DNA from: Macrostomum lignano
Lineage: Eukaryota
Direction: 5' to 3'
DNA length: 64,000 nucleotides
Assembly (NCBI GenBank): GCA_002269645.1
Contig: NIVC01001517.1
Span: 1 to 64,000, forward strand
In this document: one piece after another, positions 11,870 through 61,963 of the stretch
Layout: each line of letters begins with the position of its first letter
Position numbering within the stretch: position 1 is the stretch's first letter
The notes under the pieces: generated by a model
What the model was told of the DNA's origin: nothing
What the model saw: the letters and a program-made list of their open reading frames with translations, nothing else
Databases searched by the model: none
Made by a program: the position numbers and the translations under genes

Positions 11870-11880
11870 AAGAGTGAAGC

Positions 11881-21448: not shown

Positions 21449-21481
<33 letters not shown>

Positions 21482-29112: not shown

Positions 29113-32100
29113 ATGAGCATCAGCCTAGAGCATCTACGGCTGCTGTCGGCCTGCGAAATGGGAGACGTCCAAGAGGCACGTCGGCTACTGCTGGCGGGGG
29201 TTTCGCCCGAATGCTGCGAGGCCGACACCAGAGAGACTCCCGTCTACGTAGCTGCCAGGTGAGAACATCCCATTCTTATGCATTTCTGGGCTAAACAGAG
29301 GAGCAAAAACTGAATCGGAGATTTGCTCATCATCCGCGCCGAGTCGTACTGCCCACAGCCGATGCAGGAGGTGCTATTGCTAACGCTGCAGGCCCCCTAC
29401 CGGCGGGGACAGGCGCGCACTCAGCTTTTCATCAACTGCCTGCTAGCTGACGCCGGCGCCCCGGATTCGGCTGGCGGCGTGGCGTTCATTCGCGGCCTGG
29501 CCTTGAAGCGCGCCCTGAGACGCTGACAGCGTATTCTGTTGTTGTTGTTATGCTTTAACAATAATCCTTTTAACCATCTTTTTCCTTAGAAAAAAGCCTT
29601 CGAGAGCTTCAGATAGCTTGAATGTCAAATTTCAAAGTCTAGAAGCTGGGAGCTATATTCCCATATAGATTTTTTTTGGTTTCGCTCCCAGCTGGTTTCT
29701 AATCTGCTGTTCTGTGATAAGATTAAGATTGCAGTCGGCTCTGGGCTTTACTGGTGTCCTGCAAGGCTGGCTAAATACTATAGGGCTGGGAAACCAGCGG
29801 TTTGCTTATTTCCAACAACACAACAAAATACGCAATCAGATCTTCTAAAAACAACGTCTGCAGCAGAACCTCCTGCATCGTCTGCAGAGAGTACCACGAT
29901 ATCACGCGCAGCGATCGCGTGACATCGCGTGTTGCGTTGTTGCTCTGCCGTTACTCTGATAATTTTTGTAGCCAGGGTCTTTGGATTCTAGAAGAAGATA
30001 ACAAAATTGCCAACGTAGCCTTTAAAATAGAGAACTCGCGGCGACCCGCGAAAGCGTTTCGAGGTCGAATCGATTTTTTAACTGTCTTTAATTTTCATAA
30101 GTAGTTAGCGGTATCAGGGTACGAGTAGTTAAGATAAATAAAATTGGCAAAAAATTCGTTGAAAACGATTTTAAAACATCGATGCAGAGAAGGACACGCA
30201 AGAGTCGTCGACTTGCTGGCCCGTTTTGGAGCTGACATCGATCACACGGAGGTGGACGGCTTCAGTCCGCTTTACATGGCCGCTCAGAATGACCACTGCG
30301 CAGCTGCCGAGCGGCTCCTGGTGGCCCAGGCGGACGTGAACCTGCCGCAGCAAAACGGCGGCACCCCACTGCTCATCGCAACTCAGCAGGGCCACGGCGG
30401 CATGGTCCGGCGACTCATTCAGGCCAAAGCCGACGTAAATTGCGGTAACGTCAATGGCACAACGCCGCTGTACATTGCCTCTCAGTACGGAAACGCAGGC
30501 CTCATCCAGCGGCTTTTGGACGCTGGCGCCGCGCCCGATCAGCCAGAAACCGACGGCACCGCGCCTCTGTGGGTCGCGGCTCAGAACGGACACTTCGAAG
30601 CGGTCGAGCGACTTGTGCAGGCCGGCTGCGAGCTGGATCCGCGCCGCCTCGAGACCCAGTCGACACCGCTGTTCATCGCAGCTGAGAACAACAACCTGGA
30701 CATTGTGGAGCTGCTGATCACGGCGGGAGCAAACACGGAACTGGCTGACTATCACAACCAGACGCCGCTGTACACGGCGGCATGGAGTGGCTATTTGTCC
30801 GTTGTTGAACGCCTGATCGAAGCTGGAGCCGCTGTCGATGTTGCGAGATCTGACGACGGCACAACCGCGCTGTTTCGCGCGGCGATTCGAGACCATGCGG
30901 CACTCGTTAAACGTCTGGCCGCCGCCGGGGCCAACGTCAACCACCCGGCAAGGAACGGTCACACCGCCCTGGTTGCCGTCTCTCTAAAAGGTGACGCAAA
31001 GATGGCGGCTCTGCTGCTACAGCTGGGCGCCGACGCAACTGTGGCGTGCGGAAACGAAAATCCGCCACTGACGCCGCTTCGGGCGGCAGTCGAGTTCAAT
31101 CGAGTGGCCGTGGTTCGAGTGCTGCTAGACGACGCTTTTGCCAAAGGGCGGCGGTTCAACAACTGCGACGAAGCGTTTCGCCGCGACGCTCTGGACTGCA
31201 CCAGACTGTCTCGGCGGAGAGGCTTGAGGGAAATCGCCAGCCAGCTGGGAGCGTTCTGGAACACGCGGCCTGTGACTCCGGGGCAGCAACAGAGTCAAAT
31301 TTTGACGGTAGAGAGCAGGTGAAAATAGGAGCCTCTGAAATGTTTATATAACTTTTCCTTTTGGTGTTTCTCAGAAAAAAATGAAATAGACATTTAATGG
31401 GTTTGATTTGGGTCAGCTAAATGTCATATTTTTGGTCGCATCCATACACTAGAGAGCACATTAGGACACTCAGAGAGTAAAACATTTCTTAGAACACCTT
31501 ATAACCAATTTTTACCAACTATTTCAGTAACATCACACAGTCAAGAGCGGCTGAACTCCGAGGACCTCAAAGCCTTCACGAAGCGTTCAACGCTGCCGGT
31601 TTCACCAGCGATCGGGCGGCCTTCCAGTGCGCCATGTCGGACGTGCTCGAGGAGGTGATCCGCGGCCACAGGAACACCAGAGAAGTGAACCTTGTGGGCA
31701 GCTACAGCGAGGGCTGGGGCAACAGCCTGGTTTCGCTGAACGGTCGCACGGACCCAGACTCAGATCTGGACATAACAGAGTTCTCGCACAGGAGACTGTT
31801 CCACATTCGGGGCAGGTGTCGCTGCACTGAGCCCCAGGTGGAAGATGTCCTGGACTACGACAGGGGCCATGTGCTCTACGAAGGAGCCAGTAAGTTTGTT
31901 GTGTTCGGTCTTCGCTGCAAAAATAAAGTCGCACTAAAAAGTTCCGAAGATATGCAATAAAATGTTGATCGTTACCTGCAGGCTCCAACCCGTCCCTGCC
32001 GGACAGAGGCTCCGATCTCAGGCCCGCCATGGACCTGGTGCCAGCGTTCGCTTGCTGCTCCTACCCGGATATTGCCGTTCTGCATCAGCAGGACACTTAC

Positions 32101-33423
32101 CTGCCAAAGCTGCTGTTAGCCGAACTGCGAGCGGAGCTGTCGCGGCCTCGCTCCTGCCACCTGATCCGCGCCTCGGCTCCCGGTTTCGAGGCCAAGCAGA
32201 TGCGGGTAAGCACGACCTTCTTTGAGAAACGGTTCATGCGCAGTCTCACCGCAGTCCAGGGACAGCTGTTCCTGACACTCAAGTTCCTCATCAAGCGGGT
32301 CATTGGCAAGGAGCTGAATGTACACGGACTCAAGTCCTATCACGCAAAGACGCTCACGTTCCGCATGGTGACTAGCATGGAGCCAAGACTGTGGCAGCCG
32401 GAGAACCTCAGGGAGCTGGTCTGTACCGCTCTTGAGGATTTGCGCCACTGCTTGACCACCGCTCCGCCTGGCGAGTGCATGCCGCACTACTTCATGCAGG
32501 ACGCCCCGCTCTACCTGCGGCGGGGCAGCTCAGCCAAGGCCGAGGTGATCGCCGCTCTGGACAAGGTGAAGAGCAACTTGGCAATGTACTTGTCCAGTCT
32601 GGCGTCACAACTGCAGCCACTGACGGATGCTCAGGCCAGCTTCCGGCTGCATCCGTTCACGTTGCTACCGATCTACCTGGTGCTGCCTTGGCCAGACGAA
32701 GGAGAGCTGCAGTACCACCACCTGTACGCTGTTGTTCGCAAGCTCGTGCTCGATCTGGGAGCGCCAAAAACTCCGAGGACTCAGGCCGAATTGCAGGAGA
32801 TGTACCGCCTGGCACAGCGACTGCCTTATTGCGCGCTCACCGCCCGCACCTGCCTACTCGCGCTGGCGCTGCTCCGAATGTCGCGTCCGTCAGAGGCAGC
32901 TCAGCAGCTGCGGCTCAGCCTGGGCTTCGAGAGGCGTCATCAGCGACCACTGCTGCGCAGCCTGCCGGTGGGCCTGGCCGCCGGGCAGGACGACGGCGGC
33001 CGCGGCAACATCCGCCGCCTGCTGGAGACGACAGACTCGGCATGGCGGTTCTGCTTCTACTACGAGTCTCTGCCGGGCCCCAGCTTCCACTACCTGCTGC
33101 CGAGTCCTAGCGCCTACGCTAGCTTCCCCTGCATCATGGCCAGCTACGAGAACTTCTTCTACGTAAACTTCGAGGCTCTGGCCAGATTGCTGATGTGCCA
33201 GCTGGCTCCGGACCTGCTGACTACCGCTGAGACGGACAGCTGGTTCCGGGAGCTGCAGACCGGCGACCCGGACTGGCTGGAGGTGGCCGTGCTCGCCCAG
33301 CACAGCCGCCGGCCTGAGCAGCTGAGGTGGGCGCTCAGCTGGCTGAGCAGTGCGCGGCCGGAAAGCCTCGAAATGCTTCGCGATATTCGAGAGAAGATCG
33401 ATCGGCTGCGGGCGCCGGAGTGA
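29113..33423 (+). CDS. Ankyrin-repeat / Mab-21 (cGAS-like receptor) nucleotidyltransferase, ~1026 aa; exons 29113-29258, 30188-31318, 31528-31889, 31982-33423
   Basis: About 10 ankyrin repeats (G-x-T-P-L-x-x-A-A). NTase motif VGSYSEGWG...DSDLD; MDLVPAF; Mab-21 C-lobe RVSTTFFEK...LKFLIK...LKSYHAKTLTF...W.PENL...MPHYFM. GT-AG junctions give an intact 3081-nt frame. Confidence 0.87.
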
Positions 33424-35598: not shown

Positions 35599-38500
35599 AT
35601 GTCCGTTTGGGCCAGCAGTTGGCTTTGCGGAGTGCCTCTGCTGCTGCTCGGCTGCTTCTGCTGCCTGCGGTGGGCCACCGGCTCTGCCGCAGATCCGGCG
35701 GTTCCGGGTCGGTTGGTGAGTTCGGAGCTTACCATGATTGCTGGGCTGGTGATGGAAGGTGTGATCTGATCTACTGACTATACTCGTACAGGAGTCACAA
35801 TGTCCACTTCATGCAAATTTTTGCGTACAAGCTATTGTAGATGCTAGAGTGCCATTATCGACGTTATTACCGATGCTAGAGTGCCATTATCAACGTTATT
35901 ACCGATGCTAGAGTGCCATTATCGACGTTATTGTTGACGCAAGAGTGCCATTATCGACGCTGTTGTTGATGCAAGAGTGCCATTATCAACGTTATTATCG
36001 ATGATAGAGTGCCATTATCAACGTTATTACCGATGCAAGAGTGCCATTATCGACGTTATTTTAGATGCTAGAGTGCCATTATCGACGTTATTGCTGACGC
36101 AAGAGTGCCATTATCGACGCTATTGTTGATGCAAGAGTGCCATTATCAACGCTATTGTTGATGCAAGAGTGCCATTATCAACGCTATTGTTGATGCAAGA
36201 GTGCCATTATCGACGCTATTGTTGATGCAAGAGTGCCATTATCAACGCTATTGTTGATGCAAGAGTGCCATTATCGACGCTACAGAGCTATTATCGACGC
36301 CGGAGAGCCATTATACATGTAGATGCTGGAGAGCCATTATCGATGATAGAGTGCTATTGTCGGCGCTAGAGTATTAATTTTGGCAGAGAAGGTACCAGGC
36401 CAGATGCTAGTAAATTAGCGAAGGTACTTACTTAGAGGTCAGATCCAGGTGCTATGGCGTTATTTCCTCAGGCTTAGATGACAATCTAGGAGGGAAAGCA
36501 AAATATTTTGCAGACATCTCGATATCTTTGACAATCCCGATGCTCAACAGCCAGCCGCTACTTCACCTCGGCGAGCTCGGCACCGGCTCCGATATCTTCC
36601 CCAATGTCTGTCAGCCCGGCCCGCAGCGACATCGAGTGCGCCGGAATCTGCGCTTCGAAACTCGGCTGTCGGCACTTCCGGTTCGCAGTCGAGAGCCTGA
36701 GCTGCGCCCTTTACGACGCAGGCAGCGGGGGCGCCGGAGGGACTTCCGAAGTGGCGGCTTTTGAAGCCGACGGTGAGAAGCAAATCTCAGTGCGACACTT
36801 ATCCAAGGACTACTAAAGTAGAAGGACGCGACACTCGCAATCAATAGAAAATGTTTTGAAGGCCACCTTTCGCCGAAAAATGCACTACGGAGATAGGAAA
36901 GCTTCATTTTTTCAGCACAAAAATATTTATTCCGTTAGATAGAAGGCCGACCCAATGCTCATCATTTAATATGCTCTGCCTTTCTTACAGCTCTATAATT
37001 GATATTACGGCAATAGATCTTTGATATCAATAGAGCTATAAGAAAGGTACAGCATATCAAATTATGAACACTGGGTCTGCCTTCTATCGAACGCAATAAC
37101 AAATGACATTTTCCATAGACTGCGAGTGTCGCGTCCTGTATATACATGCTTTAGTTGTCCTTGCACTTATCACTGGGATCCCAGTTGCTACAATAAAGCC
37201 AGAGCCACAGCTTTGACAATGCTCAAAGTGCGACCCTAAGTGCTCGTAATTGTGGGACCTTGACTAAAGTTGATGTCAAATCGAGACCCTGGAGTGAAAG
37301 CCAAAACGGTAGCTTCAAACGCTTCAACCTTGATAAGATGTCATTTGAGATGGCACTGCTTGAGGTCGAGACTTAGGGCCAAAAGGTACAAGACGTTTTG
37401 GGCATTCAAATTCCCGATTCTAATCGAGAATGTTGGGGGTCACTGAGAATTCAACCCGCGCGATTACCCCACAGCAACCAACTGCCCCTACATGGCAACA
37501 CTCGGCGACCGCAGCTTCTGCACCTTCCAAGAGCGAAACAGCGCCTCTGTGAGCTTCGAGAGAACCTGGACAGAGTACGAGGCCGGCTTTGGGGACGGCA
37601 GCAACTTCTGGATCGGTGAGTGGCGAAGCTTTTGTCTACCTATGTATCAGTATTGTAGGATCAAGGACCACTAGTAGATACTACTTAAGTAGGAGGATTT
37701 TGGTAACTTTTATTAAAGCCCTTTGTAGTCTAGTGGTTAGGAGGGTTATAGCCTAGAGACTAGAGCGTCGGACTCACGACTTGAAGGTCGGGGGTTCGAT
37801 TCCCGATCCCTCAGAAACAATATGTGTCCTTGAGCAAGACACTTAACTCTGCATTGCTTTAGTTCACCCAGCTGTGAAATGGGTGCCAGCATTAGCTGGG
37901 GTAATTGAAGGTGTGTGTGGCGACCCCCCAGTCCTTGGACTGAACAGCCGTACGCAGCCTTCAGATGCGAAATAACTGCGGCTGAGCTGTCGGTTGCACA
38001 TCTGGCATGATTGGGGCAAGTGTAATCAATTATTATTATCAGTAGTAGTATTATTAAGACCTTAGATATTTAGTATATTGTGATAAAGACCCTTGACTTT
38101 TATATCCTAAATGTCATTGCCGAAGGCTCACCCATTCCGTATCAACTTTCCGTACCAAAAATTTGACATTCAGTCGTACCCGTGTCAATCAGGCCTCCAG
38201 CGCATTCACGAGCTCACAGCCTCCACGCCGAGAACCCTCCGGATCCGTTTTCTGCTGTACAACAACTCCGAGTACTTCAACGAGTACAGCAGCTTCACGG
38301 TGGGCAATTCGACAACAAAGTACCAGATGAACTATGCCGCGTTTCTGCCCAACCAGTCAAACTTGGCGAGCGACTGCCTGGCGGTGCACAATGGAATGAA
38401 GTTCTCCACCAAGGACCAGGACAATGACGCTGCGCAGGCAGACTTCTGCGCAGTCGCATACGGAAATGCGGGCTTCTGGTTCAACTACTGCCTCACGTGC

Positions 38501-38619
38501 AACCCGAACGGTGGTACGCGCCCAGCGGAGACGTCTACAGCCCCAAGTACGCCTACTGGAAATGCGTCGAGAATAACTACACTGCGGTTCGCTCCATCAG
38601 CATGATGCTGCAAGTCTGA
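35599..38619 (+). CDS. Secreted PAN/apple + fibrinogen-related-domain protein; exons ~35599-35710, 36551-36772, 37475-37616, 38192-38619; apparent 1-nt deletion at ~38510
   Basis: Signal peptide MSVWASSWLCGVPLLLLGCFCC. PAN-like SDIECAGICASKLGCRHFRF...SCALY. FReD FCTFQER...SFERTWTEYEAGFGDGSNFWIG|LQRIHELT...NGMKFSTKDQDND...GFWFNYCLTCNPNG, continued in the shifted frame as WYAPSGDVYSPKYAYW...SISMMLQV*. The exon-1 donor is uncertain. Confidence 0.82.
35840..36345. repeat. 32-bp minisatellite (GCAAGAGTGCCATTATCGACGCTATTGTTGAT)n in intron 1
   Basis: Visible degenerate array. Confidence 0.92.
37723..38040 (+). mobile_element. SINE family 1 copy g, in the PAN-FReD intron
   Basis: tRNA head ...GTCGGACTCACGACTTGAAGGTCGGGGGTTCGATTCCC, CORE-like block and tail. 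Confidence 0.85.
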
Positions 38620-38699
38620 AGTCTGCAAGGCTGAATTCGACAAGTCAGCCAGAGATTGAAGAGATGAAAGAGTACTGCATGGGATCGAAAATTTTCATG

Positions 38700-41600
38700 C
38701 ACACTTGAGAATATTGTTTTGTAGCTATTTGTTTAAATCGGTAGGTTTATATGAGCTTTATTTAGTTCTGTAGGTGGTCAATTATTGTTTTTAATCGGTA
38801 CTACGAAGTCCTATGTGTCTCAATTTTGAAAAAGACCTTATATAAATAAGTTTGCTTCCAAAGTTATTTATTTATGTGTCAATCTCGTGTGAAAGATTTC
38901 TCGACCTCATCACCAATTAGTATCTACTTTTACAAACTTCAATTTATTTCGACTGGACTAAAAACAAAGTTAAATTTGAGAAGGTTTAGTTGACTCTAGC
39001 AAGGTCAGATAGCCCCTCGACTCGACGTACTCTCGCCGCTTTCGTCGCTACTCGTAGGCGCCGGCCCGGACGCGTTACAGGTGGCCCCTCCGCTTGTGGA
39101 ACCGTGGCCGAGCGGTCGAATCTGACTGTCGGTCCGCCGCAAGACGTCGGCGAGGACGCAAATAAGCTCCAACCAACCGAGTCGGTCCAGTAACCCTCGC
39201 AGTCCCGTGTACGTCATACTTATGGGAGCTTAACCAAAACCCTCTGGGTATAAATAAAGTCTTGCCATAACTCACAAATCACAAAAGCTGTAACTTTATC
39301 GTTAACAGCGGGGGACAACCCTGTATTTGGATTTGGATTTGGATTTGGATTTGGATTTGATGCACAGCGAGCGTCCAAGAAGAAAAAATGAAAAACTTCC
39401 TTTTATTACCCAAATTTCGTTTTTCGTGGGCGGGACTTTAAGACTGTAGATCGGACTTTATAGTCGTAGGAGACTCACAAACCTAGCTTCGTAGAGTCGT
39501 TGGGAGTACTCAGAACTGGAACTTTAGAGTTGCTAAGAGGGTACTCGTTGTCGTAAAGCCGCTGGGGGGTATGTAGAGTCGTTGAGAGAAATTCTCGGTG
39601 TTTTAAGGTCGTCAAGAAGTCGGAGCTCGAACAACAAGCTCAGGTTTAAACTTCGAAATAACGGACAGACTAGCTGCCGAACGACTGTTTATGACCCTTC
39701 AAGCTCGAAGGGTTTGAGTGGCGTAGCCACCGGGGGCCGTCGTGGTTCGACATCAGCTGTATCGGCCCGGAGTCCGTCAGCTACTCCAGGTCGTCCGTCA
39801 CCGTCAACGGGTCCAGCCGCAGGTCTTTGCTCGCGTTGGCGCTGAAGAACGGTGGCGCGACGTCGACGAGCAAGCAGGTGAGCTGTTAGCACAAGAGCAG
39901 TTGGTCGGCGAACCTCAATAGCTGAGCTGACAGGGACCTCTGACGCCGGCCCAACACGCTCTCGTAGTCGACGGCGTCGTCGCGTTCTCAGCCGTAGAGC
40001 AGTGGCAGGTCCTCCGAGAACGGTGCCTACGGGTGGTTCGACTTCGGGTCGACGGACGGGTCGAGGTGTCGCATCAGCGTCAAGAGGTCGGCGACTTTCA
40101 TCCGAGCCCGGGGCGCTTCACAGACCGAGTGCGCGCTGGTGACCTGGTCCGGGCCGGCCTAGACCAGGTCGTCGACGTCCATGCCGTCGGGCCTCGAGCG
40201 CAGGCACATGTCCGTCAACTAGGACCCGACGTGGGGCCGGCTCAAGTAGGTCAAGCGCATCCAAGAGAGGAGCGCTTGGTCGAGACCGCCGAAAAGTCGC
40301 CGGACGAGTCGGGGCCGGACCGGCGGTAGGCCGTCGAGCCCGTCCGTCCCGTTGGCAAACTTGTCCAACCGGTGCTTGTACTGCAAGTCCAACCTTAAAG
40401 GCGACTGTTACAGGAGGCCGACTTCTTTAAGCGCTCGAAGTTACTCTAGGCGCAAGACGTCTTGGTCGACGCGAGAGTCTTCCTCCAGTGAAACTCGCTG
40501 TTAAGGGACGTTCAAACGCCGTAAAAGTTCTAATTAAAACTACGTGACCCCGTTCAAGGACGAGTGAGAGTGCAGAGTTCCTACATACGCGACTGAAGAA
40601 ACAGGAGTCCGTCACGTCGTAACCTAAATCGGTGTGGTCGGTTTTCCGGCCCAAATCAAATCCAGTCCAAATCAAATCTAACACAAATCAAATCCAGTCC
40701 AAATCAAAATACTTGCCCTACTCTTATGACGGTCTTCCGTTGCGAGCTTTCACTTTTCACTGAATTTTTTAATCGTCGACGAAAGATTTCACGTTTTAAA
40801 TCCTTCGTCCCTATGCTCGTCCTAAGACAGAAAAGCCCAACTTACACACGCTATTCGATTATGAATAACGCTAGTCTTGGCTCCACTGAGTGCCGTCGTC
40901 CTAAGTTCGTCAGGGACTACAGTCCGCTCGTCTAGACGACGTCGTCTTCGCGCATTCGGAGCGACAGAGAGTGTAGGAGTGACTTCAAAAGTTAGCTTGC
41001 AAGTGACGGGCGTAATGCGTCTACCATCAAGTGGGTAGCGTACTCGTAAACAAGTCCACGTTACGGAGCTTACAGACGCAGGACAAGACAGAGACCCTCG
41101 TACCGAAACTCGAAGACGCTCAGACGCCGTCGGCGGACGAACTGTCGCAGTCAGTCCGGCTTGGTCTAGTCGACGGTGTCCTCTAGCTCGTCGTCGAAGC
41201 CTGAGACGCGGTTAAGTCGGCGGAACCTCGATTGCCCTTGAGGCTCCGAAACTCGGCTCAAGTCGCGGTCCCATTACAAGAGTTAGACCACGCTGGCTAA
41301 GTACGGACGCAGAGACACGTTGCGAGCGAACAGCTAACACAGGACACTCTGTCGCAACTGGCGCGACGACGTTAACTGTCTATTTCTTCACTTCACAAGA
41401 CAGTCAACGTTACGAAATCTGATGTTCGACGTTTGTTTCCGAGATTCAAAAGAACCTTATTTAGGTCCTTTGGAAGTTCCTAACAAGACGATGAACATAG
41501 TGTCTTATTTATTAACGTACGTTGCCAATCACTAAATGGTATCATTATACGGTAGCAGTTTAAAGGGAAGCTAAAGGCGTTCATACAGGAGTTAACCGTC

Positions 41601-43334
41601 CATGAAGAGTGTCAGTCCTAGGCTGGAGTCCAAAAACAATTCGGTTAGTCGGTGACGACGGAAGAGAGGTCGTCGACCAACCAGACTTTGGAGACGAGGT
41701 CCAAGTAGGAAGCTGAGACTTCAGAGCAAGAAGCAAAGGTATCATCCTCCAAGTAGAAGATTGCAAAGCTTAGCCTGTCGTAGGTCACGGCCGAGCAGAA
41801 GACCACGAAGGCCAACGCGGAGAGGGTCACGGCCGAGCAGAAGACCACGAAGGCCAACGCGGAGAGGGTCACCGCCGAGTAGAAGGTCGTCGTCAAAAAG
41901 ATTAAGCAAAAGGTCGACGTTTAGCCGATTAAGGAGTCCGGCTCCGCGTAGGCCGTCGCCCAGGTCGCGGTAGAGAAAAGAAAGCACCAAGAGGACGAAA
42001 GCGAACGCGTCAGAAAGTAATGGGTCCGCTGAGTCCAACTCGAATCGGCGGCTAGCTTAAAGGAACAAAGCTTATCAAACTAGGAAGAGGCTAAGCTTGA
42101 ACATCGAATCGTCGAGCCGCGTGTACAAGAGTGACCCTGGCGGCTCGTCGAATTGTCTGCTCGGACGGCTCAGAAGCTCAGGGAGCTACCACGGGACGGT
42201 CTACAACTGTAGCAGGGCGACGTAGTGCCACGCGAGCAAGAACGGGAGCAAGTCGTTCATCCGGTGAAACTTCAGGCCTAGCGGCTAAGCCTGTGAGTGG
42301 CTGTGGCCGAACAAGTCTCCGTCGTCGAAGACGCAGCCTACGTTGTCATCTAACAGCGACGAGGTGCGCCCGTCCCCGAGGCCCTTGACGAGTCGAGCTG
42401 GCAGGTCGACCGGGTGCGTGGCCTACTTCATCAAGTACATCGCGACGGTGCCCGAACTCGACGAGACAGCCATTTTATCAACGTCTTGCATCACTGGTCG
42501 CTAGAACTTGGCGTGCAGGTGCTACTTCGGCAGCGACAGGGACCTCTACTTTCACATCGGCGACTCGAGAAGCGAGAGGGGCAAGCTCGTTTACATTCTG
42601 TCGAGTCGGGACTAAAGGTCCGCTCGAGAACTTCGTTTGAACTCGACTTCCGACCCCAGTAACGTTTCTTACATGCCTAGCCCTACCGAGTCGCCGGCGT
42701 GCTCAAGAACGTGCCGTAGCAGTCGTTGCAGGTCAGGCGGGTCCGACAGGTCCAGGCCGTTCCCTTTCAGCGCTGTTAGCGCTTTAAGTCTGCGTCTCAG
42801 TTCGTCTTTGACTGTCTGACCCTACGGAGACAGCGCCTGCTGGTTCCGCTTACTGGGGCTCAGACCGCTGTCTTTGACCTACGACCAGAAGCCTGGCTGA
42901 CAGGTTCTGTCGTCCAAGAAACCGCTATACGAGAGCAGTCGTCGAGGCATGTCGACCGTGAGGTCGGCCACGCCAGCGACTAGACACCTGAGGTTGACAT
43001 AGTCAGCGAGCGGCAGGAGGTGGAACTAGAGCGGCCCGAGCAGGCAGAAATCAGCTCGTCTCCGCTCGACGCGAGGGCGCGGTTTCACGTAGTCTAAGCG
43101 CGTCGGGTGCCCGTGGTAGAACCGCCAGGCCAGTCGTGCCCCCGTCACTTAATGCATTCTCTGCATAAGTTAAGGATAAACGTTATAGAACAGTCCTATG
43201 AGCTATCGAGAATCCTCTAATTAACTATTGTACTTAAAGGGCGACGTGCCACCTTGTTTGAACTTCGCGTGTCACAGCACCGAGTAAGACCAACAAAACC
43301 TGTCCATCGGCAACTACGACCGAACGACAAACTA
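38700..43334. other. Block of sequence complemented in place (not reverse-complemented); left edge approximate (38690-38760), right edge 43332-43337
   Basis: Coding sequence, GT-AG introns and AATAAA are recovered only by reading the printed bases right-to-left without complementing. The frame joins ...DGTRRL at 43335 to IKQQASINGY.... The block is rich in GTC/GAC/CG where the flanks are rich in CAG/CTG/GC. Confidence 0.93.
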
Positions 43335-44801
43335 GAGGCGGCGGGTCCCATCTGTGATGTTGGATTTGTGGATGCTAACAACGGCTTTGTAGTCGTACAT
43401 CTGGCCAGCAGCCTCCCTTAGGTAAACCTTGACGGTACCTGGCTTGCCCAGAATGACATTCAGCGGGTGGCTACTTGGGTTTATGCTGTAGTGGAACATC
43501 TCGTCCAGGGCCCCTGAAAAGAACTTCGGCATTCGATGAAACTCGGCCAGGGTGAGGGGCCTGGCCAGCAGCTGCCACTGGCGCAGTTCCTCCACGGGGA
43601 AGTGCGTGAGAATGAGGTTCTCCGGATCGGTGAGGAAGTAGAACTCGTTGCAACCGTAAATCAGCCGTCCCTCCGACTTCCTCGAGTCCTCCACGTTGCC
43701 CTGGTCGTCCAGTTTGGAATAGTTGCCGGTGTCGAATTCGGTGAGGATCTCCGCGCCCCACAGCGGATCGACGAGGCGCCACTCGCCCTCGACGTAGCAA
43801 GCGGTCCAGTTGCCGCCAGACCTCCGGGCCTCCATGCCGCTCTCGAAGCCCGCGCCTTTCTTGTAGCCGAATATCTTTTTGGATGGCACATTGGTCAGCC
43901 TGTGCATGTAGTTTTCAGGTAGTATACAGTATTGGTATCTCATAGAGTTTTTGCTTTAAGGTAATGCTAGTCTCTTTAACAGACCAGCTCATATCTTATT
44001 TGTTATTTTGCTTTTTATCCCAAATTTTAAACACTAAACTTGAGTTTTCAAGAATGGCTTTACTGAGTCCTAATTTCAAAGTAAAACTCGCAGAGAAACG
44101 CATTTTTAGGATGTGTTTCTGTTCTTGTGCTTTAGATTGACAATAATTCTAAGTAGGTTTTCAGTCATATGTGCATACCTAAATAGGTTTCCACATGGCC
44201 AAGTGGGGATATAAAGAAAAAAATTATATATATTTGATAATCAAAGCCAAAAAGTGAGCATAACTTTTTATCTTCATGCTGATAATTAACCTTACCCGAT
44301 CAACCAATCGAAAATCTCATCACTGTCGTCGGTTTGCCGCATCCGCCTGACCCGGGTGTAGAACTCAGACTCAACCTCCGCCTCGGCCAGCTCGTCCACG
44401 GGCAGGCAGCAGACGAAGCAGAAGGCCGCCCTCACTGAGTCCAGGCCGCAGCTGCTCCGCTCGAACAGCCGCACGGCGAATTCCGCGTCCGACTCGAGCG
44501 GCTCCGGCCGCAGCGACTTCACAAATTCGTCCTTCTCGGCGAACTTGGCCGCGTCGAAGATGTCCGACTTGAGCCGACGCGATGGGAACGGACCGACATC
44601 CGTGGCGTCTGGGTCTTTGGGCTCCTCGCCCAGAGTGCGCTGCAGGTGGGCGAGCACCGTGGGAGTTGGGTAAAACCCGGACGCGATCTTCTCGGCCAGG
44701 TTGTCCTCGTCCAGCAGGTAGGAGGCCAAGTCAATTTCCCCATCTTCCGGCCGGTAGGCGCGGTAATACTCCAGATCTGCGAGACTCGGTGGAAGGGACA
44801 T
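38988..44801 (-). CDS. KY/hillarin-like transglutaminase-fold protein fused to plastin/fimbrin-type CH1-CH4 actin-binding domains, ~1430 aa; exons 44801-44296, 43899-41539, 41367-40893, 40506-39721, 39154-38988 (bases below ~43334 must be read reversed, uncomplemented)
   Basis: KY-like: IFGYKKGAGF, WTACYVEGEWRLVDPLWG, NEFYFLTDPENLILTHFP...WQLL. Plastin-like: WLNKNLRSDPDC...DDGILLC...DTIDKR...ENITLALNSAQSLG; LMRWVNYHLRNAG...ENFSEDVRDSEAY; GNSNLNVMFVANLF; REERTYANWMNSAGV; LENCDYAVELGRQLGFSLVGI; IVEWTN...LLDLID; GAKVFASPVD...MLIAAFAALM. One 1-nt deletion at ~39135. Confidence 0.88.
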
Positions 44802-46446: not shown

Positions 46447-48978
46447 TCAATGCAGCAGCACCCCCGGCAGCAGCTGAGCTACCTTAACCGCAGCCGTCCT
46501 GTCTTTATGATATCCCAGATGCAGGAAGTCGTGCTTGGCAAAGGCGGCCACAGACTGGTTGACAAAGCTGTCAGGCCGCTGCAAGAACCTGTCGCAGTGC
46601 TGCAGCTGCAGGGAGTTGAGCAGCAGGCGGCGAAGCAGCGGCACTCGGCACTGCCAGCGAAGTTTGGCGAGGCCCGGCGCCTCAGCGTCGAACACAGGCT
46701 GGAACAGCTCCGGCGGCGCCACCAAGATGCTTGAGGCAGCTGCGGTCAAGAACTTCCTAGCGATCGAGTCCAGGACCACTGGGCCCGTGGCGAACACCGC
46801 TCGATGTCGCTGCCAGCGGCGCCGCCAGAGACGCAGCGGGCCGCCGTGCTCAGCCCACAGCCTGGCCGGCTGGGTCAGGAAGAAGTGGCGCCAGAAACTG
46901 CGGCACGGCGCCGAGTAAATCAGCGCGTTGCTGATCAGGCTGGGCTGGCCGTACAGGAAGATGGCGTGCGGCTGCGGGTGGCGCGGGTCACCTGACTCAC
47001 CGACTGGGTCACCTGACTCACCGACTAGGTCACCTGACTCACCGACTGGGTCACCTGACTCACTGACTGGGTCACCTGACTCACTGACTGGGTCACCTGA
47101 CTCACTGACTGGGTCACCTGATTCACTGACTGGGTCACCTGACTCACTGACTGGGTCACCTGACTCACTGACTGGGTCACCTGATTCACTGACTGGGTCG
47201 CCCTGACTCACTGACTGGGTCGCCTGACTCACTGACTGGTCACCTGACTCACTGACTGGGTCACCTGACTCACTGACTGGGTCACCTGACTCACTGACTG
47301 GGTCACCTGACTCACTGACTGGGTCACCTGACTCACTAACTGGGTCACCTGACTCACTGACTGGGTCACCTGATTCACTGACTGGGTCACCCTGACTCAC
47401 TGACTGGGTCACCTGACTCACTGACTGGTCACCTGACTCACTGACTGGGTCACCTGACTCACTGACTGGGTCACCTGACTCACTGACTGGTCACCTGACT
47501 CACTGACTGGGTCACCTGACTCACTGACTGGGTCACCTGACTCACTAACTGGGTCACCTGACTCACTGACTGGGTCACCTGACTCACTAACTGGATCACC
47601 TGACTCACTGACTGGGTCACCTGACTCACTGACTGGGTCACCTGACTCACTGACTGGGTCACCTGATTCACTGACTGGGTCACCTGACACACTGACTGGG
47701 TCACCTGACTCACTGACTGGGTCACCTTGACTCACTGACTGGGTCACCTGATTCACTGACTGGGTCACCTGACACACTGACTGGGTCACCTGATTCACTG
47801 ACTGGGTCACCTGACACACTGACTGGGTCACCTGACTCACTGACTGAGTGGCTGGATTACCCATCTGTCATACAGAATGGACTGGCTGTGTCAGTGATCT
47901 GTCCTACAGAACAGCCGGCTGTGTCAGTGATCTGTCATTCAGAACGGACTGGCTGTGTCAGTGAACTGTCATACAGAATGGCCGGCTGTGTCAGTGAACT
48001 GTCATACAGAATGGCCGGCTGTGTCAGTGAACTGTCATACAGAATGGCTGACTGTGTCAGTGAACTGTCATACAGAATGGCCGGCTGTGTCAGTGAACTG
48101 TCATACAGAATGGCTGACTGTGTCAGTGAACTGTCATACAGAATGGCTGGCTGTGTCAGTGAACTGTCATACAGAATGGCCGGCTGTGTCAGTGAACTGT
48201 CATACAGAATGGCCGGCTGTGTCAGTGAACTGTCATACAGAATGGCTGACTGTGTCAGTGAACTGTCATACAGAATGGCTGACTGTGTCAGTGAACTGTC
48301 ATACAGAATGGCCGGCTGTGTCAGTGAACTGTCATACAGAATGGCTGACTGTGTCAGTGAACTGTCATACAGAATGGCCGGCTGTGTCAGTGATCTGTCA
48401 TACAGAATGGCTGGCTGTGTCAGTAACCAACAGTCAGCACAGCTCACCCGAGGCTCCTCAGTGAAGACAATGTCATGCTGGGCCATGATGGACTGTGCAG
48501 GCCTGAGTGACATGACATCAAGGTCGGCATACAGGCCTCCGAAATGGTTGAGAATGAGCAGCCGGGCCAGGTCTGAGCGCTCCACCCCGTGCGCCAGCTG
48601 TTCGTGAAAGAAGCGGCGCATCCGTGGCCCGAACTGAGCCATCAGGAAGCTGTCAATGCCCGCGTCAGTCCAGAAGTGCAGCTCGAAGTTCGGGTAGTCG
48701 CGGGCCCAGGAGCGGATGTAGTTGGCGAATGCGACTGGCACAGAGTCAGTCTGGTACATCAGGTGGATCCTACGGACCGGCAGTTCCTGATCTCGCCCGG
48801 TGCAATGAGGCGAGGCGTTCCACCTGGCTGCGAACTCTTTGTAGGGAAAGCCGTCACCTGAGAGCAGCTGAGAGGCCGGCCACATGATAAACATGAGCAG
48901 CAGCAGCACTGACATGATGATGGGGTGGCGCAGCCGGAAACTGTGCCGGCACCTGAGCAGGTGCCTCATTAGCCGCAT
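46447..48978 (-). CDS. GT32-family (DXD, Gly_transf_sug) type II membrane glycosyltransferase; exons 48978-48448 and 46971-46447
   Basis: N-terminal TM PIIMSVLLLLMFIMWPASQLL; RRIHLMYQT; YIRSWARDYPNFELHFWTD; SDLARLLILNHFGGLYADLDV. Exon 2 has SLISNALIYSAP and ATGPVVL. Phase-0 intron GTGAGC...CCGCAG. Confidence 0.85.
46985..47850. repeat. 21-bp minisatellite (CACTGACTGGGTCACCTGACT)n in the GT32 intron
   Basis: Visible. Confidence 0.96.
47875..48425. repeat. 33-bp minisatellite (GTGTCAGTGAACTGTCATACAGAATGGCCGGCT)n in the GT32 intron
   Basis: Visible. Confidence 0.96.
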
Positions 48979-49360: not shown

Positions 49361-52354
49361 GGGAGGTTGTGTATGTATGTATGTAATATATCCTGGGTTT
49401 TTCTAGCATCAGAGTTGCAATGCCAGAACTTATATACCAGAGCTTCAGCTGTTGCTTAAGGAGACCAAGTTATTACTACTCATATACATGTATAGGTTAA
49501 ATCAATATCATAAAGCTTTAATTGAAAGTTATATCCTTATATGAAAAGTAGGCCCTATATAGGCCTAAAGCTTTAGATCTAGCTCAATAAGTTATATAAA
49601 GACTATTTACTGTTTATATTTATTAATTTGAAGTAACAGCTTTTAGTTTTGAACCAAAAATATTGTTTTTTAATACAAATTCAAATTTTTCAGATTTTAA
49701 CACCATTAATTGCAAAATTATAATTTTTTAAATGCAAATCAAATGCTTAAATAAAAATTCATATTATCATTTATATGGATAAATTCATTTATGAATTTAA
49801 ATCATATTGTATCTTCTAAACATTCTAGAGTTTGAAAATCTTTGATATCTGCCATGCAAAGGAAAATGGTAAAAGTTAACTTATATTAGGGACTTCAGTG
49901 AGGTTTTTAAAACTAAAAATTAGGCCATTTTTTGTACTTCATCATATAGATCCATGCTTTATGAGCATGGTGACATTTCATTTATAAAAATTGGTTGGGT
50001 ATTAAAAAAGTTATGGTACATTTTGTGCTACATTTTTTATGTTGCCTTTTCAAAGTATATTAACTTTACTTCACACTTTACTCCTTTCAATAGTTATAAG
50101 TGTAGAAAGATAGGCCCTTTTTGCCATTTTTACAATTTTGAACGGGATAATTTTGCCTCATTGAAGTCCCTACTTATATTCTGCTCTGATCCCATGTAGC
50201 ATTTGTGTATACATTTTCTTATGCATACTTTTGGACTAACTTATAGAGTTACTCAATGATAGAAACTTGTTGAGCTCAATAATATTAATATATTAGGCCC
50301 TAAACTAAAGCTTTTTTGCATTCCAATTATAAAATTCTTCCTGTCTTTTGTGTCACACCAGTTTAAAACTTAATTAACTAAATAACCAAAGATTGCGAAT
50401 ATACTACCACTAAGAGGTTTACACTGTTTACACATAATAGACATGGTGACCTGGCAGGCCACCCAGGCCTCTAACTAAAGTTAAGAACCCAAGATACGAC
50501 CCTTCGGCCTTCATCAACCCTTGGCCTTGCCTTGCGCCCTTACTACATCTTGCTTAACTAAATTTAATCAATGCATGGTTATTATAGCCAAGATGTTCTT
50601 TGACCTACTACATGTCGTCAAATATGCATGATATCCATCGACATAATCATGGTAAACGGGCGCAACCATAGCGCATATGGCATATGCTTAATGCTGCTGC
50701 ACGTGATACGAATCATCAGAGTCGAGAATCAACGAGAATCTACTGAAGTTGAAAATGTGGTAGTGACAAGTGTGACTGTTGTATTTTTTATTTTGGCGTC
50801 CATTGCATGGCCTTACCTTTTGGAAGTTTTTCGGAAGTTCCCCCATTTATCGGTCTAATCGTGGGATTTTTGTGCCCTTTACTTGTTAAATAAATCATAA
50901 AAGTTTGTTTTACTCTTTCCTATCGATAACCTGGAAACAGCGTTCCAATTCGGTAAGTCCCGCTGTTGGTCCCAGAACCTTGCCCGTGGCCGTTTATATA
51001 TACATGTAAACTCACAGTATACACCACACATAAAAATGTATACTTCTTTTTCTTTTCCCACTTTTCCTTTTGTGTTGCCACTAGTAGTATATACTATAGA
51101 AGGTGGAAACGGAACCAGCAGCGCTGTCCAGTTTTTTGACTAAACCGGTTATTTCGAATAGCCGCTAATAACGCGTTCCACACTGGCAGTTACTAGTTAC
51201 GAACCGGACGAAAATATTTTGGATTTGTTTAAAAGAATTAACTGGGATAACTTGCTGGGATGGCCTTCATGTCAGAGCATTTTGGGTGTGCCCGCGGCCA
51301 TGAAGTGTAAGTAGCAGAATACGATTCGGTCAAAATCGTTGCAAGTGTATACATGTAGATAGTAGTCGAGGTGGTGGAGTTAGCGAAGGTCCCGGAGTGA
51401 GGCAGGTATAGAGCGGGAGTGAGGTGGTCGCGGAGTGAGTTGGGCGCGCGGAGCGAGGGGTTCTCCAGCAGTTCAGTCGTGCTTGCTAAGATTCTGCATC
51501 TTCGTAGAAAATCTCAATCATTTTGCCGGCACTGAAACTTATTCAGTTAGTTAAATATAACCCACTAATTTTGTTCTGTTCGATCACGCAGTATATCTTC
51601 GCCCGCAGTTGAATGTACAAATACGTTGCGGAGATTTTGAAGGCGATTCCTCTCAAATTCAATTCGGAATCGGATCACTGGAGCACCAAGCGATACCATG
51701 CAGACTCCAAGAAGTCAGGCAGCGGCCACCGCAAATATTGGGGTGTTTATTCACAAATCTTCCGTCATAAGTTGTTTGCATCTCCACCAGTTGACTTTTC
51801 CACCAGTTTGAAACTTTTTTCTCTGAGGAGCAGAGGACTCAAAATTGCGTTTATCTGCATGTTGGTGGGGTCTCAGACACACAGTGCCCCAAACTGCTGA
51901 GGTGCCCCCCCCCGTCTAACTTTGGCATTGCATTCCAATCTCCAAATTTGTGGTTTTTGCATTCTTTTGAGTTTGAAATTAGCTTTGCTCTAAGTAGTTG
52001 AAATTATACTCGATTTCTACCGTCGAAGTTTACAATTGTCTCCTCAATATAGTTTCTGAATTCCTTAATTAATTCTATAGATTCTCATTTTTTTCTGCGA
52101 GAGTTTTCTGAAAAAATGTAAGACAATAATTACGACGCAAATTCGTGCTTCAAATTCCGCAGTGGAAACTTTGGCATTTAAAAACTGAAGCAGAATTTAA
52201 TAAATCCATTTTTCTTTGCCATTTCTCACAGAATTGGAATTTCAGCGATTCAAATCCTGAGATATACATGTAAATTGCTTCAGCTTGGAACCTTCCTAGA
52301 CAGAAGCTACTCACAGAAACAGAAGCCAGGGTACAAGAGCTTAAACTCTCAGCC

Positions 52355-54360
52355 ATGAACTTTTCTCTGCTAGTTGCTGCGGCTCTGCTGGCCGCTCTGA
52401 CGGGGTCATCGGCCAATGTTGCCGAGAAGCAGGAGAGAGGCAAGCGGATGGACCACATACTGTGCCAGGCCGGTCACCAGCTAAGTGAAGACTCGGACTT
52501 CATTTGCCAGCCCTGCAGCGCCGGCACCCATAGGGGAATAACCGTGAATTCCAAGTGCCAGAAGTGCCCGCCAGGCTCATACAGCCGCGCCGGGGCCGCC
52601 GCCTGCTCCAAGTGCTGGCCGGGCAGCTTCGCCGCCAGCTCAGGCTCCGCGAGCTGCCAGAAGTGCGCCAAGGGCTCGATGGCCGCCACGGACGGCTTGT
52701 CGAGCTGCACGCCCTGCCCTGCCGGCAGCTTCATCAGCTTCAGCGGCTCCCCAGCCTGCGTGCAGTGTCCCGCCGGCACCTCGAGCAAGGCCGGAGAAGC
52801 GGAGTGCAGCAAGTGCCAGCCGGGCCACTTCTCCCCAGCTGGAGCGGCCGCCTGCAGGCCGTGCCCGGCCGGAAGCTACTCAGCAGCGGGCGCCTCAGCT
52901 TGCACCAGCTGCCCGGCCGGAAGCTTCTCAGCTGCTGGCGCCTCGGCTTGCACCCGCTGTCCGGCCGGCCAGTTCGCCTCATCAGAAGGCAGCAAGCAGT
53001 GCAAGGCCTGCCCTCCGGGCTCCTTCTCTGACACGGCGGGGCGACTGAGTGCCAACAGTGCGATCGGATCTTCGCCCTGGCTACCAAGTCTGGCATGACT
53101 AAATGCGACCTTTGCCCCAACGGCGGCGCCACCTTTGGGGACAACCGCTGCTACAGTGAGCTCCCAGCAGTCCATCCTATTTCTTACCTCAAGCTCATAA
53201 AACCTCGAGAACCCTGAGAATAGCACTAGTGCACCAGTTACTGCTAAACTATCGGGGTTGCTACGAGCGCATATTGCGATCGTGGCCCTTGCGGTTTAGG
53301 CTACTTGGTTTATTATGATTGTTCTTGGTGAATCTAACTAGTTTGATTTTTGGTAGGTTGCTGCCACCAGGTTTTTGGTATTCCCTAATCCTAGTACTTA
53401 GATAATTAAAGACTTAGACCGGAAAACAAAGAATTTATTTACTCGAGAGATATAGTCCAACAAAACAAACTTATTAATATGCAATAGGTACTACAGATAG
53501 TTTATTAAACTGGTGCAAAAATTGATCGGCATCGACTACCGTTATGTACTGCTATGGCATCGACCACCTGTAACAGTTTTACGTACATGAATTCCACAAC
53601 TGCTATTCCCGATCTTACTTTATCATCTCCTCTACGTTAGAAATGCCTTAGACTGGCTCAAAGTCCCAAAATGTGTAACTTCTTCTTCACGAGTCTCAAC
53701 TGCTCGCTACTTAGAACAAAGCCCCAAAATCACGTTCTAATCCCATCATGAATACTTTCCCTGGCTAGAACTACTGACAGTAGCGTAAAAGCATAAATGC
53801 CCTATTATTACAATGTTAAAGAATCCTTTTTTATTTTGTTTCTTTTGATTAGGTAGGCCTATAGATTGAACACAACGGAAGGTCGAAAGTACATTTTTAA
53901 GCCTCTCTAGAACCTCACCCCCGACACCAAAACCGGAATTCCAGGAAAGTTGAACGTCTCCTGTTGGACGAGCTGGCCAGAATGCGAGCGCACAATTGAC
54001 AATGACGTGTACTCCTACGGACAGGCGCTGAACAAGAAGTTCGCCAAGCCTTCGACTCCAGTGCATGAGACGTATTTTCACTACAAATTTGATGCTCCAG
54101 TGCACTTGAGGGGCTACGTTGTCTGGGGCAAGTACGGCTGCTGCTTGAAGAGCCTCACTGATTACGAAATATATGTCATCCATGAGGGGAACCCGATATC
54201 CTGCTTCTATACTGTTGGAAAATATTATGCAGACAAATACTATGCTTCTCATGGCGGCTGCGATGTGGATGAGGTCAAGGATTTAAAAATTATTCCCAAA
54301 AAAGACGACGCAGTCAATAAAATCATCACAGTGGCTGAGGTGGCGTTCTACGTCTATTGA
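52355..54360 (+). CDS. Secreted Cys-rich protein with tandem GCC2/GCC3 (ephrin-receptor-like) repeats and a C-terminal beta-rich, possibly lectin-like domain; exons 52355-53155 and 53945-54360; 1-nt deletion at ~53040
   Basis: Signal peptide MNFSLLVAAALLAALTGSSA. About 10 C-x2-C-P-A-G-S-F/Y-S repeats. The shifted frame continues ATECQQC...KCDLCPNG...RCY into a phase-1 GTGAG...CCAG junction with exon 2 (ending VAEVAFYVY*). Confidence 0.8.
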
Positions 54361-54724
54361 CCGTGATCGGACTTGGAGAAAGAGCAGAAATAAACCACAG
54401 GAACAGCTGTTTAGCTGGGAATCCAGTTTCATTTTACTCTTTTATTGGTCCGACATTGTCCTGATACAGATTGAACATTTCAAGCAGCCCCTCACTGCAG
54501 TCAGTAAGCTGCAAAATAAGAGTCGATAGCATCAGTCATGATTAAAGTGCAAGACAGCCGCAAGATGGCCTGATGTGCTTTTACAAGGTTGAAAAGTAAA
54601 TTATTTCACAAGGTAGATACTGCGTCGAAAACTTGAATTTAGCAGCCACTTTTGCAAGGTCGAAACTTTATATAACAAGAACCAAACAGTAGTTTTCTCT
54701 AGTCTAGTAACGAATTAATCGATC

Positions 54725-54802
54725 GATCAGTCAATCAATCAATCAGTCAATGAATCAATCAATGAATCAGTCAATCAGTCAATCAGTCAATCAGTCAATC
54801 AG

Positions 54803-54853
<51 letters not shown>

Positions 54854-54905
54854 GTCAATCTCCCAACCAACCAAATAATCAATTAATCAATCAATCAATC
54901 AATCA
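54725..54905. repeat. (TCAA/TCAG)n microsatellite
   Basis: Visible. Confidence 0.9.
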
Positions 54906-54918
54906 AGCGAGCAAACAT

Positions 54919-60246: not shown

Positions 60247-61963
<1,717 letters not shown>

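What the first reader, a model, noticed from the sequence alone, without database searches (positions are those of the whole stretch)
38700..43334. 4.6-kb block is complemented in place: it reads only backwards, on neither real strand
Between ~38.7 and 43.33 kb neither strand has credible genes, and composition flips to GTC/GAC/CG-rich. The minus-strand KY-like ORF stops abruptly at ...DGTRRL-TAG (43334-43332). Reading the printed bases right-to-left without complementing from 43334 gives ATC AAA CAG CAA GCC AGC ATC AAC GGC TAC = IKQQASINGY.... This stays in frame for ~600 codons to 41539. It then passes three GT...AG introns (GTAAAT..TTGCAG, GTGAGT..TTGCAG, GTGAGT..ACGCAG), a TGA at 38990-38988 and an AATAAA at ~38849-38844. 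So the true + strand is the base-wise complement of what is printed. Polymerases cannot generate a complement-only (mirror) segment, and a true inversion would be readable by reverse complementing. The block is therefore most likely an assembly, scaffolding or data-processing artefact that hides a real gene from standard ORF finders. A real mirror-sequence event in vivo would be unprecedented.
Basis: partly seen in the sequence, partly recalled or inferred. Interest (0 to 1): 0.95.

Follow-up and report, generated by a model that had tools for sequence, protein, structure and literature searches.

The report
Base-complemented block hiding a flatworm gene
About 4.6 kb of this flatworm sequence has had every base swapped for its complement without being reversed, which hides most of a normal gene; this is almost certainly a data-handling error and not biology.

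Summary
From about 38,730 to 43,340 the printed sequence makes sense only when read right-to-left without complementing. Read that way it gives a 606-codon open frame, three canonical GT..AG introns and a stop at 38990-38988. It encodes a KY-like/plastin protein: four CH domains, a KY Ig-like domain, E=2e-99 to human plastin-3. It matches Macrostomum lignano protein UniRef100_A0A1I8H0G3 essentially residue for residue.

Complementing the block in place joins it, in frame and with no indel, to the normally readable minus-strand exon at 43341. Reversing it in place breaks that continuity. A true inversion matches nothing.

A reversal-sensitive Markov statistic is negative only in this block. The four 1-kb tiles inside it score -18 to -55 nats, against +32±21 in 58 control tiles.

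The left border is about 38,721-38,731, with support 38,695-38,860.

No polymerase makes such a segment, and a near-identical public gene copy reads straight across the junction. Verdict: an in-silico artefact, not a real feature. I cannot tell whether it sits in a deposited assembly or was introduced when the window was prepared.

The parts
38729..43340 (.). Block whose printed bases are the complement, without reversal, of the real + strand. The right end is exact to within 1 nt. The left end is a statistical estimate: best 38721-38731, support about 38695-38860, hard bracket 38621-38988.
   Evidence: Held-out Markov LLR of the block is -142 to -194 nats. tblastn of P0001 is continuous only after complementing in place.
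43340..43341 (.). Right junction, inside a coding exon. The repaired minus strand reads TDGTR|AEIKQ. The printed minus strand reads TDGTRRL*. Base 43341 is ambiguous, because either state gives an Arg codon.
43332..43334 (-). Spurious TAG stop created by the complementing. It truncates the printed minus-strand KY-like ORF.
44295..44801 (-). Exon 1 of the KY-like/plastin gene, outside the block and readable normally.
   Evidence: It matches P0001 residues 1-158.
43341..43898 (-). First part of exon 2, outside the block and readable normally. 100 % identical to P0001 residues 159-344.
41539..43340 (-). Remainder of exon 2, readable only in the mirrored reading. It holds the KY Ig-like domain, an acidic repeat linker and the start of CH1. 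The public model removes a possible in-frame 153-nt intron, 43271-43119 (GT..AG).
41368..41538 (-). Intron, 171 nt, GTAAAT...TTGCAG in the mirrored reading. GC 0.37.
40893..41367 (-). Exon 3, mirrored. Rest of CH1 and CH2. 137 of 138 residues identical to P0001.
40507..40892 (-). Intron, 386 nt, GTGAGT...TTGCAG in the mirrored reading.
39721..40506 (-). Exon 4, mirrored. End of CH2, all of CH3 and most of CH4 of the plastin-like actin-binding core.
39155..39720 (-). Intron, 566 nt, GTGAGT...ACGCAG in the mirrored reading. It contains a (TTTAGG)n microsatellite.
38988..39154 (-). Last exon, mirrored. Plastin C-terminus, with stop TGA at 38990-38988. It needs a 1-nt frame correction near 39131, where the C run GCCGCC[C]TGG appears to lack a base.
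38844..38849 (-). AATAAA in the mirrored reading, 139 nt after the stop. Candidate polyadenylation signal (inference only).

Best explanation
The block is a sequence-record artefact. In the real genome, evidently Macrostomum lignano, a five-exon KY-like/plastin gene lies on the minus strand from about 44.8 to 38.8 kb.

In the printed record, each base between about 38,730 and 43,340 has been replaced by its Watson-Crick partner while the order of bases was kept. The same result arises if a piece stored in the opposite orientation was flipped by reversing only. It also arises if an intended inversion was carried out as complement only.

The order and length of the bases are untouched, so positions, reading frame and exon-intron layout are preserved. 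Every strand-specific signal (codons, splice sites, poly(A) signal, CpG depletion) now reads only right-to-left on the printed strand. Standard six-frame tools therefore see nothing there, plus a false stop at 43334-43332.

Shown here: the transformation, its right border, the identity of the hidden gene, and its continuity with the flank.

Inferred: that the cause is software or data handling rather than DNA. Both borders are gap-free (no N). The right border sits at an arbitrary position inside an exon with base-perfect continuity. That pattern fits a programmatic in-place operation on a finished string, a bug or a deliberate control, better than a mis-joined contig. My rough split is 70:30. 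I cannot decide between them with the data at hand.
For: - The mirrored reading has a 606-codon open frame. Long frames in the mirrored forms elsewhere in the window lie mostly in simple or tandem repeats.
- The reversal-sensitive k-mer and Markov statistics are negative only in this block.
- The mirrored reading matches UniRef100_A0A1I8H0G3 of M. lignano at E=0.
- It carries Pfam Ig-like_KY and four CH domains.
- It aligns to plastin-3 (7r94_F, E=1.9e-99) over residues 124-623.
- Exons 4-5 hit 69 plastin/fimbrin proteins, best E=2.4e-74.
- Only complementing in place restores a single continuous alignment across 43341|43340. Reversing in place and reverse-complementing in place do not.
- P0001 has 0 mismatches in the 244 residues spanning the junction, 0 in the next 476, and 1 in the next 138.
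- All three introns have canonical splice sites in the mirrored reading and are AT-richer than the exons.
- ORFs of the block as printed have no family match above cut-off.
- There are no N bases at the borders.
- In the searched literature, reversed-but-not-complemented DNA turned up as a deliberately designed synthetic sequence, not as a natural or assembly event (one paper read).
Against: - No raw reads, no source accession and no independent DNA for this exact locus could be reached. The physical absence of the printed junctions is therefore inferred, not shown.
- P0001 comes from a slightly different copy or assembly. It differs at one residue in exon 3 (K in the window model, E in P0001, model residue 1004), by an S/R substitution in exon 1, and by an indel-like stretch in exon 1. 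It therefore proves only that a near-identical copy is normal, not that this very copy is.
- The left border is only statistically placed.
Confidence: 0.97

Rival explanations
1. The artefact sits in the deposited genome assembly itself. A scaffolding, curation or patching step flipped a 4.6-kb piece by reversing or complementing only. On this reading it was not introduced when this 64-kb window was prepared.
For: A reverse-only flip of a piece held in the opposite orientation gives exactly complement-in-place (logic; consistent). The underlying sequence looks like a draft long-read assembly, with two apparent 1-nt frameshifts within 1 kb. M. lignano assemblies went through several assembly, polishing and scaffolding steps (PMC5730564).
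Against: There are no N gaps, overlaps or missing bases at either border. The right border lies mid-exon with perfect continuity, which is unusual for a contig join. Widely used assemblers and scaffolders are not known to emit such pieces (my own knowledge). Polishing with mapped reads, as Pilon was used there, would be expected to flag or rewrite a block to which no read maps (inference).
Confidence: 0.28
2. A physically real 'mirror' segment: the organism's DNA really carries the base-wise complement of a gene in place, produced by some unknown parallel-strand copying event.
For: Nothing positive. It is simply not excluded without raw reads.
Against: All known DNA polymerases synthesise antiparallel complements (established knowledge). 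The hidden gene matches a public copy at 637 of 638 residues aligned inside the block and keeps intact splice sites. A real event would therefore have to be extremely recent, and it would have destroyed the gene. A near-identical copy reads normally across the junction.
Confidence: 0.002
3. An ordinary chromosomal inversion or rearrangement that disrupted the KY-like gene.
For: The printed minus-strand ORF ends abruptly at 43332-43334.
Against: An inversion would be readable on the reverse complement. Neither printed strand of the block matches the protein, and reverse-complementing the block adds no alignment. ORFs of the block as printed match nothing.
Confidence: 0.001
4. Chance: the mirrored open frame and the skewed composition are coincidences in non-coding DNA.
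For: None.
Against: E=0 to a M. lignano protein and 1.9e-99 to plastin-3. LLR is -18 to -55 nats per kb, against a control minimum of -3.7.
Confidence: 0

Closest known systems
[quoted passage not shown] 2024, as described in bioRxiv 10.1101/2025.02.04.636130)
   Same: It is the same string transformation, since a reverse-only sequence is the reverse complement of a complement-only one. Base composition, homopolymers and short repeats are kept, while coding sequence and all non-palindromic signals are destroyed.
   Different: That sequence was designed on purpose, chemically synthesised and installed in cells as a roughly 100-kb payload. Here a 4.6-kb stretch inside an otherwise natural flatworm locus is affected, with arbitrary borders inside a gene. 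Nothing indicates that it exists as DNA.
Genuine chromosomal inversion, or a mis-oriented (reverse-complemented) contig in an assembly
   Same: A block with sharp borders interrupts a gene, and an ORF is truncated at the border.
   Different: An inversion is readable by reverse complementing and moves the far end of the block next to the junction. Here the order is preserved and only the letters are complemented.
KY (kyphoscoliosis peptidase)-like proteins and plastin/fimbrin actin-bundling proteins: the hidden gene
   Same: An Ig-like_KY domain (PF23265) and four CH domains that align end to end with the actin-binding core of plastin-3, residues 124-623. The same fusion is annotated in public M. 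lignano protein A0A1I8H0G3.
   Different: The Pfam scan at E<=0.001 reported no EF-hand headpiece of the kind canonical plastins have. A KY-like region takes its place at the N-terminus. The Pfam transglutaminase-core model was not hit at E<=0.001 either.

Membership tests
In-silico complement-only / reverse-only sequence artefact | Protein homology is found only in the reverse-without-complement reading, not on either printed strand | tested here: met
In-silico complement-only / reverse-only sequence artefact | k-mer statistics are swapped XY<->YX relative to neighbouring DNA, with sharp borders | tested here: met
   Only this block is negative. The right change-point lies within about 10-60 nt of the protein-defined border, depending on Markov order.
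In-silico complement-only / reverse-only sequence artefact | Undoing the operation restores base-perfect continuity with the flank (same frame, no indel) | tested here: met
   for the right junction. The left junction lies in non-coding DNA and could not be tested this way.
In-silico complement-only / reverse-only sequence artefact | The printed junctions are absent from raw reads or independent assemblies of the same genome | not testable with these tools
   No eukaryotic read or assembly resource was reachable. Look-ups found nothing.
True chromosomal inversion | The block is readable after reverse complementing, and the distal end of the gene abuts the junction | tested here: not met
   the rc_in_place variant gives the same truncated alignment as the printed window.
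Plastin/fimbrin | Two tandem actin-binding domains, each made of two CH domains | tested here: met
   four CH stretches, E=2.1e-60; alignment to plastin-3 residues 124-623.
Plastin/fimbrin | N-terminal EF-hand calcium-binding headpiece | tested here: not met
   no EF-hand family reported at E<=0.001. The N-terminus is KY-like instead.
KY-like proteins | KY-type immunoglobulin-like domain (PF23265) | tested here: met
   58 and 42 bits, against a cut-off of 27.
KY-like proteins | Transglutaminase-like core domain | tested here: inconclusive
   No Pfam transglutaminase-core hit at E<=0.001. A motif resembling it (...CYVEGEWRLVDPLWG...) is visible by eye only.

The most novel reading that the evidence does not exclude
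The printed sequence is physically real. On this reading, a 4.6-kb stretch of a flatworm chromosome was replaced in vivo by the base-wise complement of itself in the same 5'->3' order. That would imply an unknown parallel-strand copying mechanism.
Probability: 0.002. Interest if true: 1.

Novelty: not a real feature. Interest (0 to 1): 0.08.

Why it matters
This is a matter of data quality, not biology. The block hides about 75 % of the coding sequence of a 1,380-residue gene from every standard ORF finder, aligner and gene predictor. It also creates a false premature stop.

If it is present in a deposited assembly, it should be reported and corrected. The same simple statistic (forward versus mirrored Markov likelihood, or XY/YX dinucleotide ratios) could then screen whole assemblies for further cases.

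If it was introduced when the window was prepared, by a bug or as a deliberate control, the first-stage reader detected and decoded it correctly.

A physically real mirror segment would overturn basic assumptions about template-directed DNA synthesis. Nothing here supports that.

Tried and rejected
- **Independent DNA for the locus.** I tried look-up of encoding contigs with P0001 and with two flanking window ORFs. I also ran an exact look-up of five as-printed ORFs in the protein collection. Nothing was on record, so whether the artefact sits in a public record could not be tested.
- **Repeats shared with the rest of the window.** I looked for repeats shared between the block, printed or complemented, and the rest of the window, to get a DNA-level cross-check. 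There were none at E<1e-3.
- **Reverse-in-place hypothesis.** Rejected. The protein aligns, but the continuity with exon 2 at 43341 is lost, and a mid-exon start would sit next to the stop of the fibrinogen-like gene.
- **True inversion.** Rejected.
- **Exact left border.** It could not be fixed. Markov change-points give 38721-38731, but the support interval is about 160 nt wide because the region is AT-rich UTR or intergenic DNA. The poly(A)-signal arguments are suggestive only. These are AATAAA at 38849-38844 in the mirrored reading, and an AATAAA for the + strand fibrinogen-like gene at 38758-38763 only if that stretch is complemented.
- **Precedent in the literature.** A search for natural or assembly-derived cases returned eleven papers, six listed. 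The one I read describes a deliberately designed synthetic sequence, and none of the listed titles concerns an assembly or natural event.
- **Scans not run.** The protein search that includes those sources found only P0001 for this region, so no related DNA was to be expected there.
Full report

Yes. I translated the window in four forms: as printed, reverse complement, reverse only and complement only. The reverse-only form has a 606-codon open frame from 43355 down to 41538. Only an 816-codon retrotransposon ORF on a real strand is longer. The other long frames in the reverse-only and complement-only forms lie mostly in simple or tandem repeats.

The mirrored reading from 43334 starts IKQQASINGY.

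Dinucleotide frequencies inside the block are swapped XY<->YX relative to the rest of the window. CG is 0.089 and GC 0.063, against 0.041 and 0.064 elsewhere. TA/AT, CA/AC and TG/GT are swapped too. This is the signature expected when strand-symmetric DNA is complemented without reversal.

I ran a leave-one-out order-3 Markov log-likelihood ratio of forward against mirrored reading.
- The 58 control 1-kb tiles average +32.4 +/- 20.8 nats, minimum -3.7.
- The four tiles inside the block score -31.5, -55.0, -51.7 and -17.9.
- The only control tiles near zero are reversal-symmetric simple repeats, at 20-21 kb and 54-55 kb.
- Held out from training, the whole block scores -142 to -194 nats, depending on model order.

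**2. What is hidden there?**

The mirrored 599-residue peptide hits one protein at E=0. This is P0001, UniRef100_A0A1I8H0G3, a 'CH domain-containing protein' of Macrostomum lignano. It also hits the Pfam KY-type Ig-like domain.

I rebuilt the gene on the repaired minus strand:

| Feature | Coordinates | Note |
|---|---|---|
| Exon 1 | 44801-44295 | outside the block |
| Exon 2 | 43898-41539 | crosses the right junction |
| Intron | 41538-41368 | GTAAAT..TTGCAG |
| Exon 3 | 41367-40893 | |
| Intron | 40892-40507 | GTGAGT..TTGCAG |
| Exon 4 | 40506-39721 | |
| Intron | 39720-39155 | GTGAGT..ACGCAG |
| Exon 5 | 39154-38988 | stop TGA at 38990-38988 |

The introns are AT-richer than the exons (GC 0.37-0.45 against about 0.59). 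Non-coding signals are therefore mirrored too, not only the codons.

The 1,380-residue model has four CH domains (E=2e-60) and the KY Ig-like domain. Its C-terminal 526 residues align end to end with the actin-binding core of human plastin-3 (7r94_F residues 124-623, E=1.9e-99). Exons 4-5 alone hit 69 plastin/fimbrin proteins, best E=2.4e-74. ORFs of the block as printed match no family above its cut-off.

**3. Which transformation, and where are the borders?**

I aligned P0001 by tblastn to four versions of the window.

| Version | Result |
|---|---|
| As printed | alignment at 100 % identity, stopping at 43341 (residue 344) |
| Complemented in place | one uninterrupted minus-strand HSP, 43913->41679, across the junction, then 41345->40929 |
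| Reversed in place | aligns, but away from its partner exon |
| Reverse-complemented in place (true inversion) | nothing added |

A global alignment of my model to P0001 shows 0 mismatches and no indel over the 244 residues that span the junction. It shows 0 mismatches in the next 476 residues and 1 in the next 138. The remaining differences are gene-model choices.

At nucleotide level the repaired strand reads TDGTR|AEIKQ, whereas the printed strand reads TDGTRRL*. Base 43341 is ambiguous because both states encode Arg.

The left border lies in AT-rich 3'-UTR or intergenic DNA, between the stop of the + strand fibrinogen-like gene (38620) and the mirrored stop (38988). Markov change-points put it at 38721-38731, with support of roughly 38695-38860.

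**4. How did it arise?**

Complement-in-place keeps the order, length and positions of the bases and inverts only the letters. As a string operation it is trivial. Three routes give it:
- complementing without reversing;
- reversing only a piece that is stored in the opposite orientation;
- carrying out an intended inversion as complement only.

As chemistry it is unknown, because template-directed synthesis gives antiparallel complements (established knowledge).

The hidden gene is intact apart from one 1-nt frame error in its last exon, and is almost identical to a public copy that reads straight across the junction. Both borders are gap-free (no N). The right border lies at an arbitrary place inside an exon, with base-perfect continuity.

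In the literature I could search, 'reversed but not complemented' DNA turned up as a deliberately designed synthetic sequence, such as the SynHPRT1R payload.

I conclude with about 0.97 confidence that the block is an in-silico artefact. The clean, gap-free, mid-exon borders fit an in-place operation on a finished string, a bug or a deliberate control, somewhat better than a mis-flipped contig in a deposited assembly. My split is roughly 70:30, and I could not test it. No raw reads, source accession or independent DNA for this locus were reachable.

One caveat applies. P0001 stems from a slightly different copy or assembly: one residue difference in exon 3 (K in the window model, E in P0001), plus an S/R substitution and an indel-like stretch in exon 1. 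M. lignano assemblies contain 180 Mb of blocks that are at least 95 % identical (PMC5730564). P0001 therefore shows that a near-identical copy is normal, not that this very copy is.

**5. Comparison with known things**

The block works like the synthetic 'backwards' control sequences. It is not an inversion: that membership test was run and failed.

The hidden gene combines a KY-like N-terminal part with a plastin-like four-CH core. It lacks a detectable EF-hand headpiece. The public annotation carries the same fusion, so that architecture is not new.

**6. Verdict**

- The decoding is confirmed, with a 6-nt correction of the right border.
- The artefact interpretation is supported.
- This is not a real biological feature, and its interest is low except as a quality-control flag.
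- The unexcluded extraordinary reading, a physically real mirror segment, deserves a probability of about 0.002.

Noticed in passing
window 44801-38988 (minus strand, repaired): The hidden gene fuses a KY-like N-terminal region (Ig-like_KY domain) to a plastin-type core of four CH domains through an acidic repeat linker (EDEPALGEAQPEAP x2). No EF-hand headpiece is detected. The same fusion is present in public M. lignano protein A0A1I8H0G3, whose model stops in exon 3. Exons 4-5 have no near-identical public protein.
   Followed up: partly
window ~39125-39135: The last exon of the hidden gene needs a 1-nt correction to stay aligned with the plastin C-terminus and reach the TGA. The window reads GCCGCCTGG where GCCGCCCTGG would keep the frame. 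This is either an indel error of the underlying assembly or a decaying paralogue. It is independent of the complementing.
   Followed up: partly
window ~38500-38520: The + strand fibrinogen-related (FReD) gene just left of the block (Pfam Fibrinogen_C, ORF 38111-38605) also changes frame. The conserved C-terminus ...YAPSGDVYSPKYAYWKCVENNYTAVRSISMMLQV* is in another frame and ends at 38620. This is a second apparent 1-nt frameshift within 1 kb, typical of a draft long-read assembly or of pseudogenes.
   Followed up: partly
window 43271-43119: The public gene model splices out a 153-nt, in-frame GT..AG segment (GC 0.46 against 0.59 in the flanking exon). It stays open in the mirrored reading, so the '600-codon ORF' probably includes a retained in-frame intron.
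   Followed up: partly
window 11880-14710; 19125-21480; 61124-61621; 786-1724; 46985-48424; 55215-56196: The window is packed with tandem arrays: a 34-mer x83 at 99 % identity, a 10-mer (CAGACAGACT) x240, a perfect (AGT)166, and several 16-33-mers. This fits the reported 15 % simple and tandem repeat content of M. lignano. The arrays produce long spurious open frames in all reading forms.
   Followed up: no
window 59436-56989 (-) and 63998-63456 (-): A retroelement ORF of 816 codons with RVT_1 and RNase H domains. A second RNase H/zf-RVT fragment runs off the right end of the window.
   Followed up: no
window 8267-8944 (+): Fragment of a piggyBac-type transposase (DDE_Tnp_1_7, E=2e-8).
   Followed up: no
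window 30138-31319 (+), 31969-33420 (+), 52274-53095 (+), 10293-10919 (+): Normally readable neighbours: an ankyrin-repeat ORF, an ORF with a Mab-21 C-terminal domain, an ephrin-receptor-like cysteine-rich repeat ORF, and a possible second fibrinogen-related fragment (21.8 bits, just under the 22-bit cut-off). None shows the mirror signal.
   Followed up: no
window 20001-21000 and 54001-55000: These are the only control tiles with a forward-versus-mirrored LLR near zero (-0.4 and -3.7). Both overlap simple repeats, (CAGACAGACT)n and (AATC)n, whose k-mer content is nearly reversal-symmetric. The statistic is uninformative there and does not indicate a further mirrored block.
   Followed up: partly
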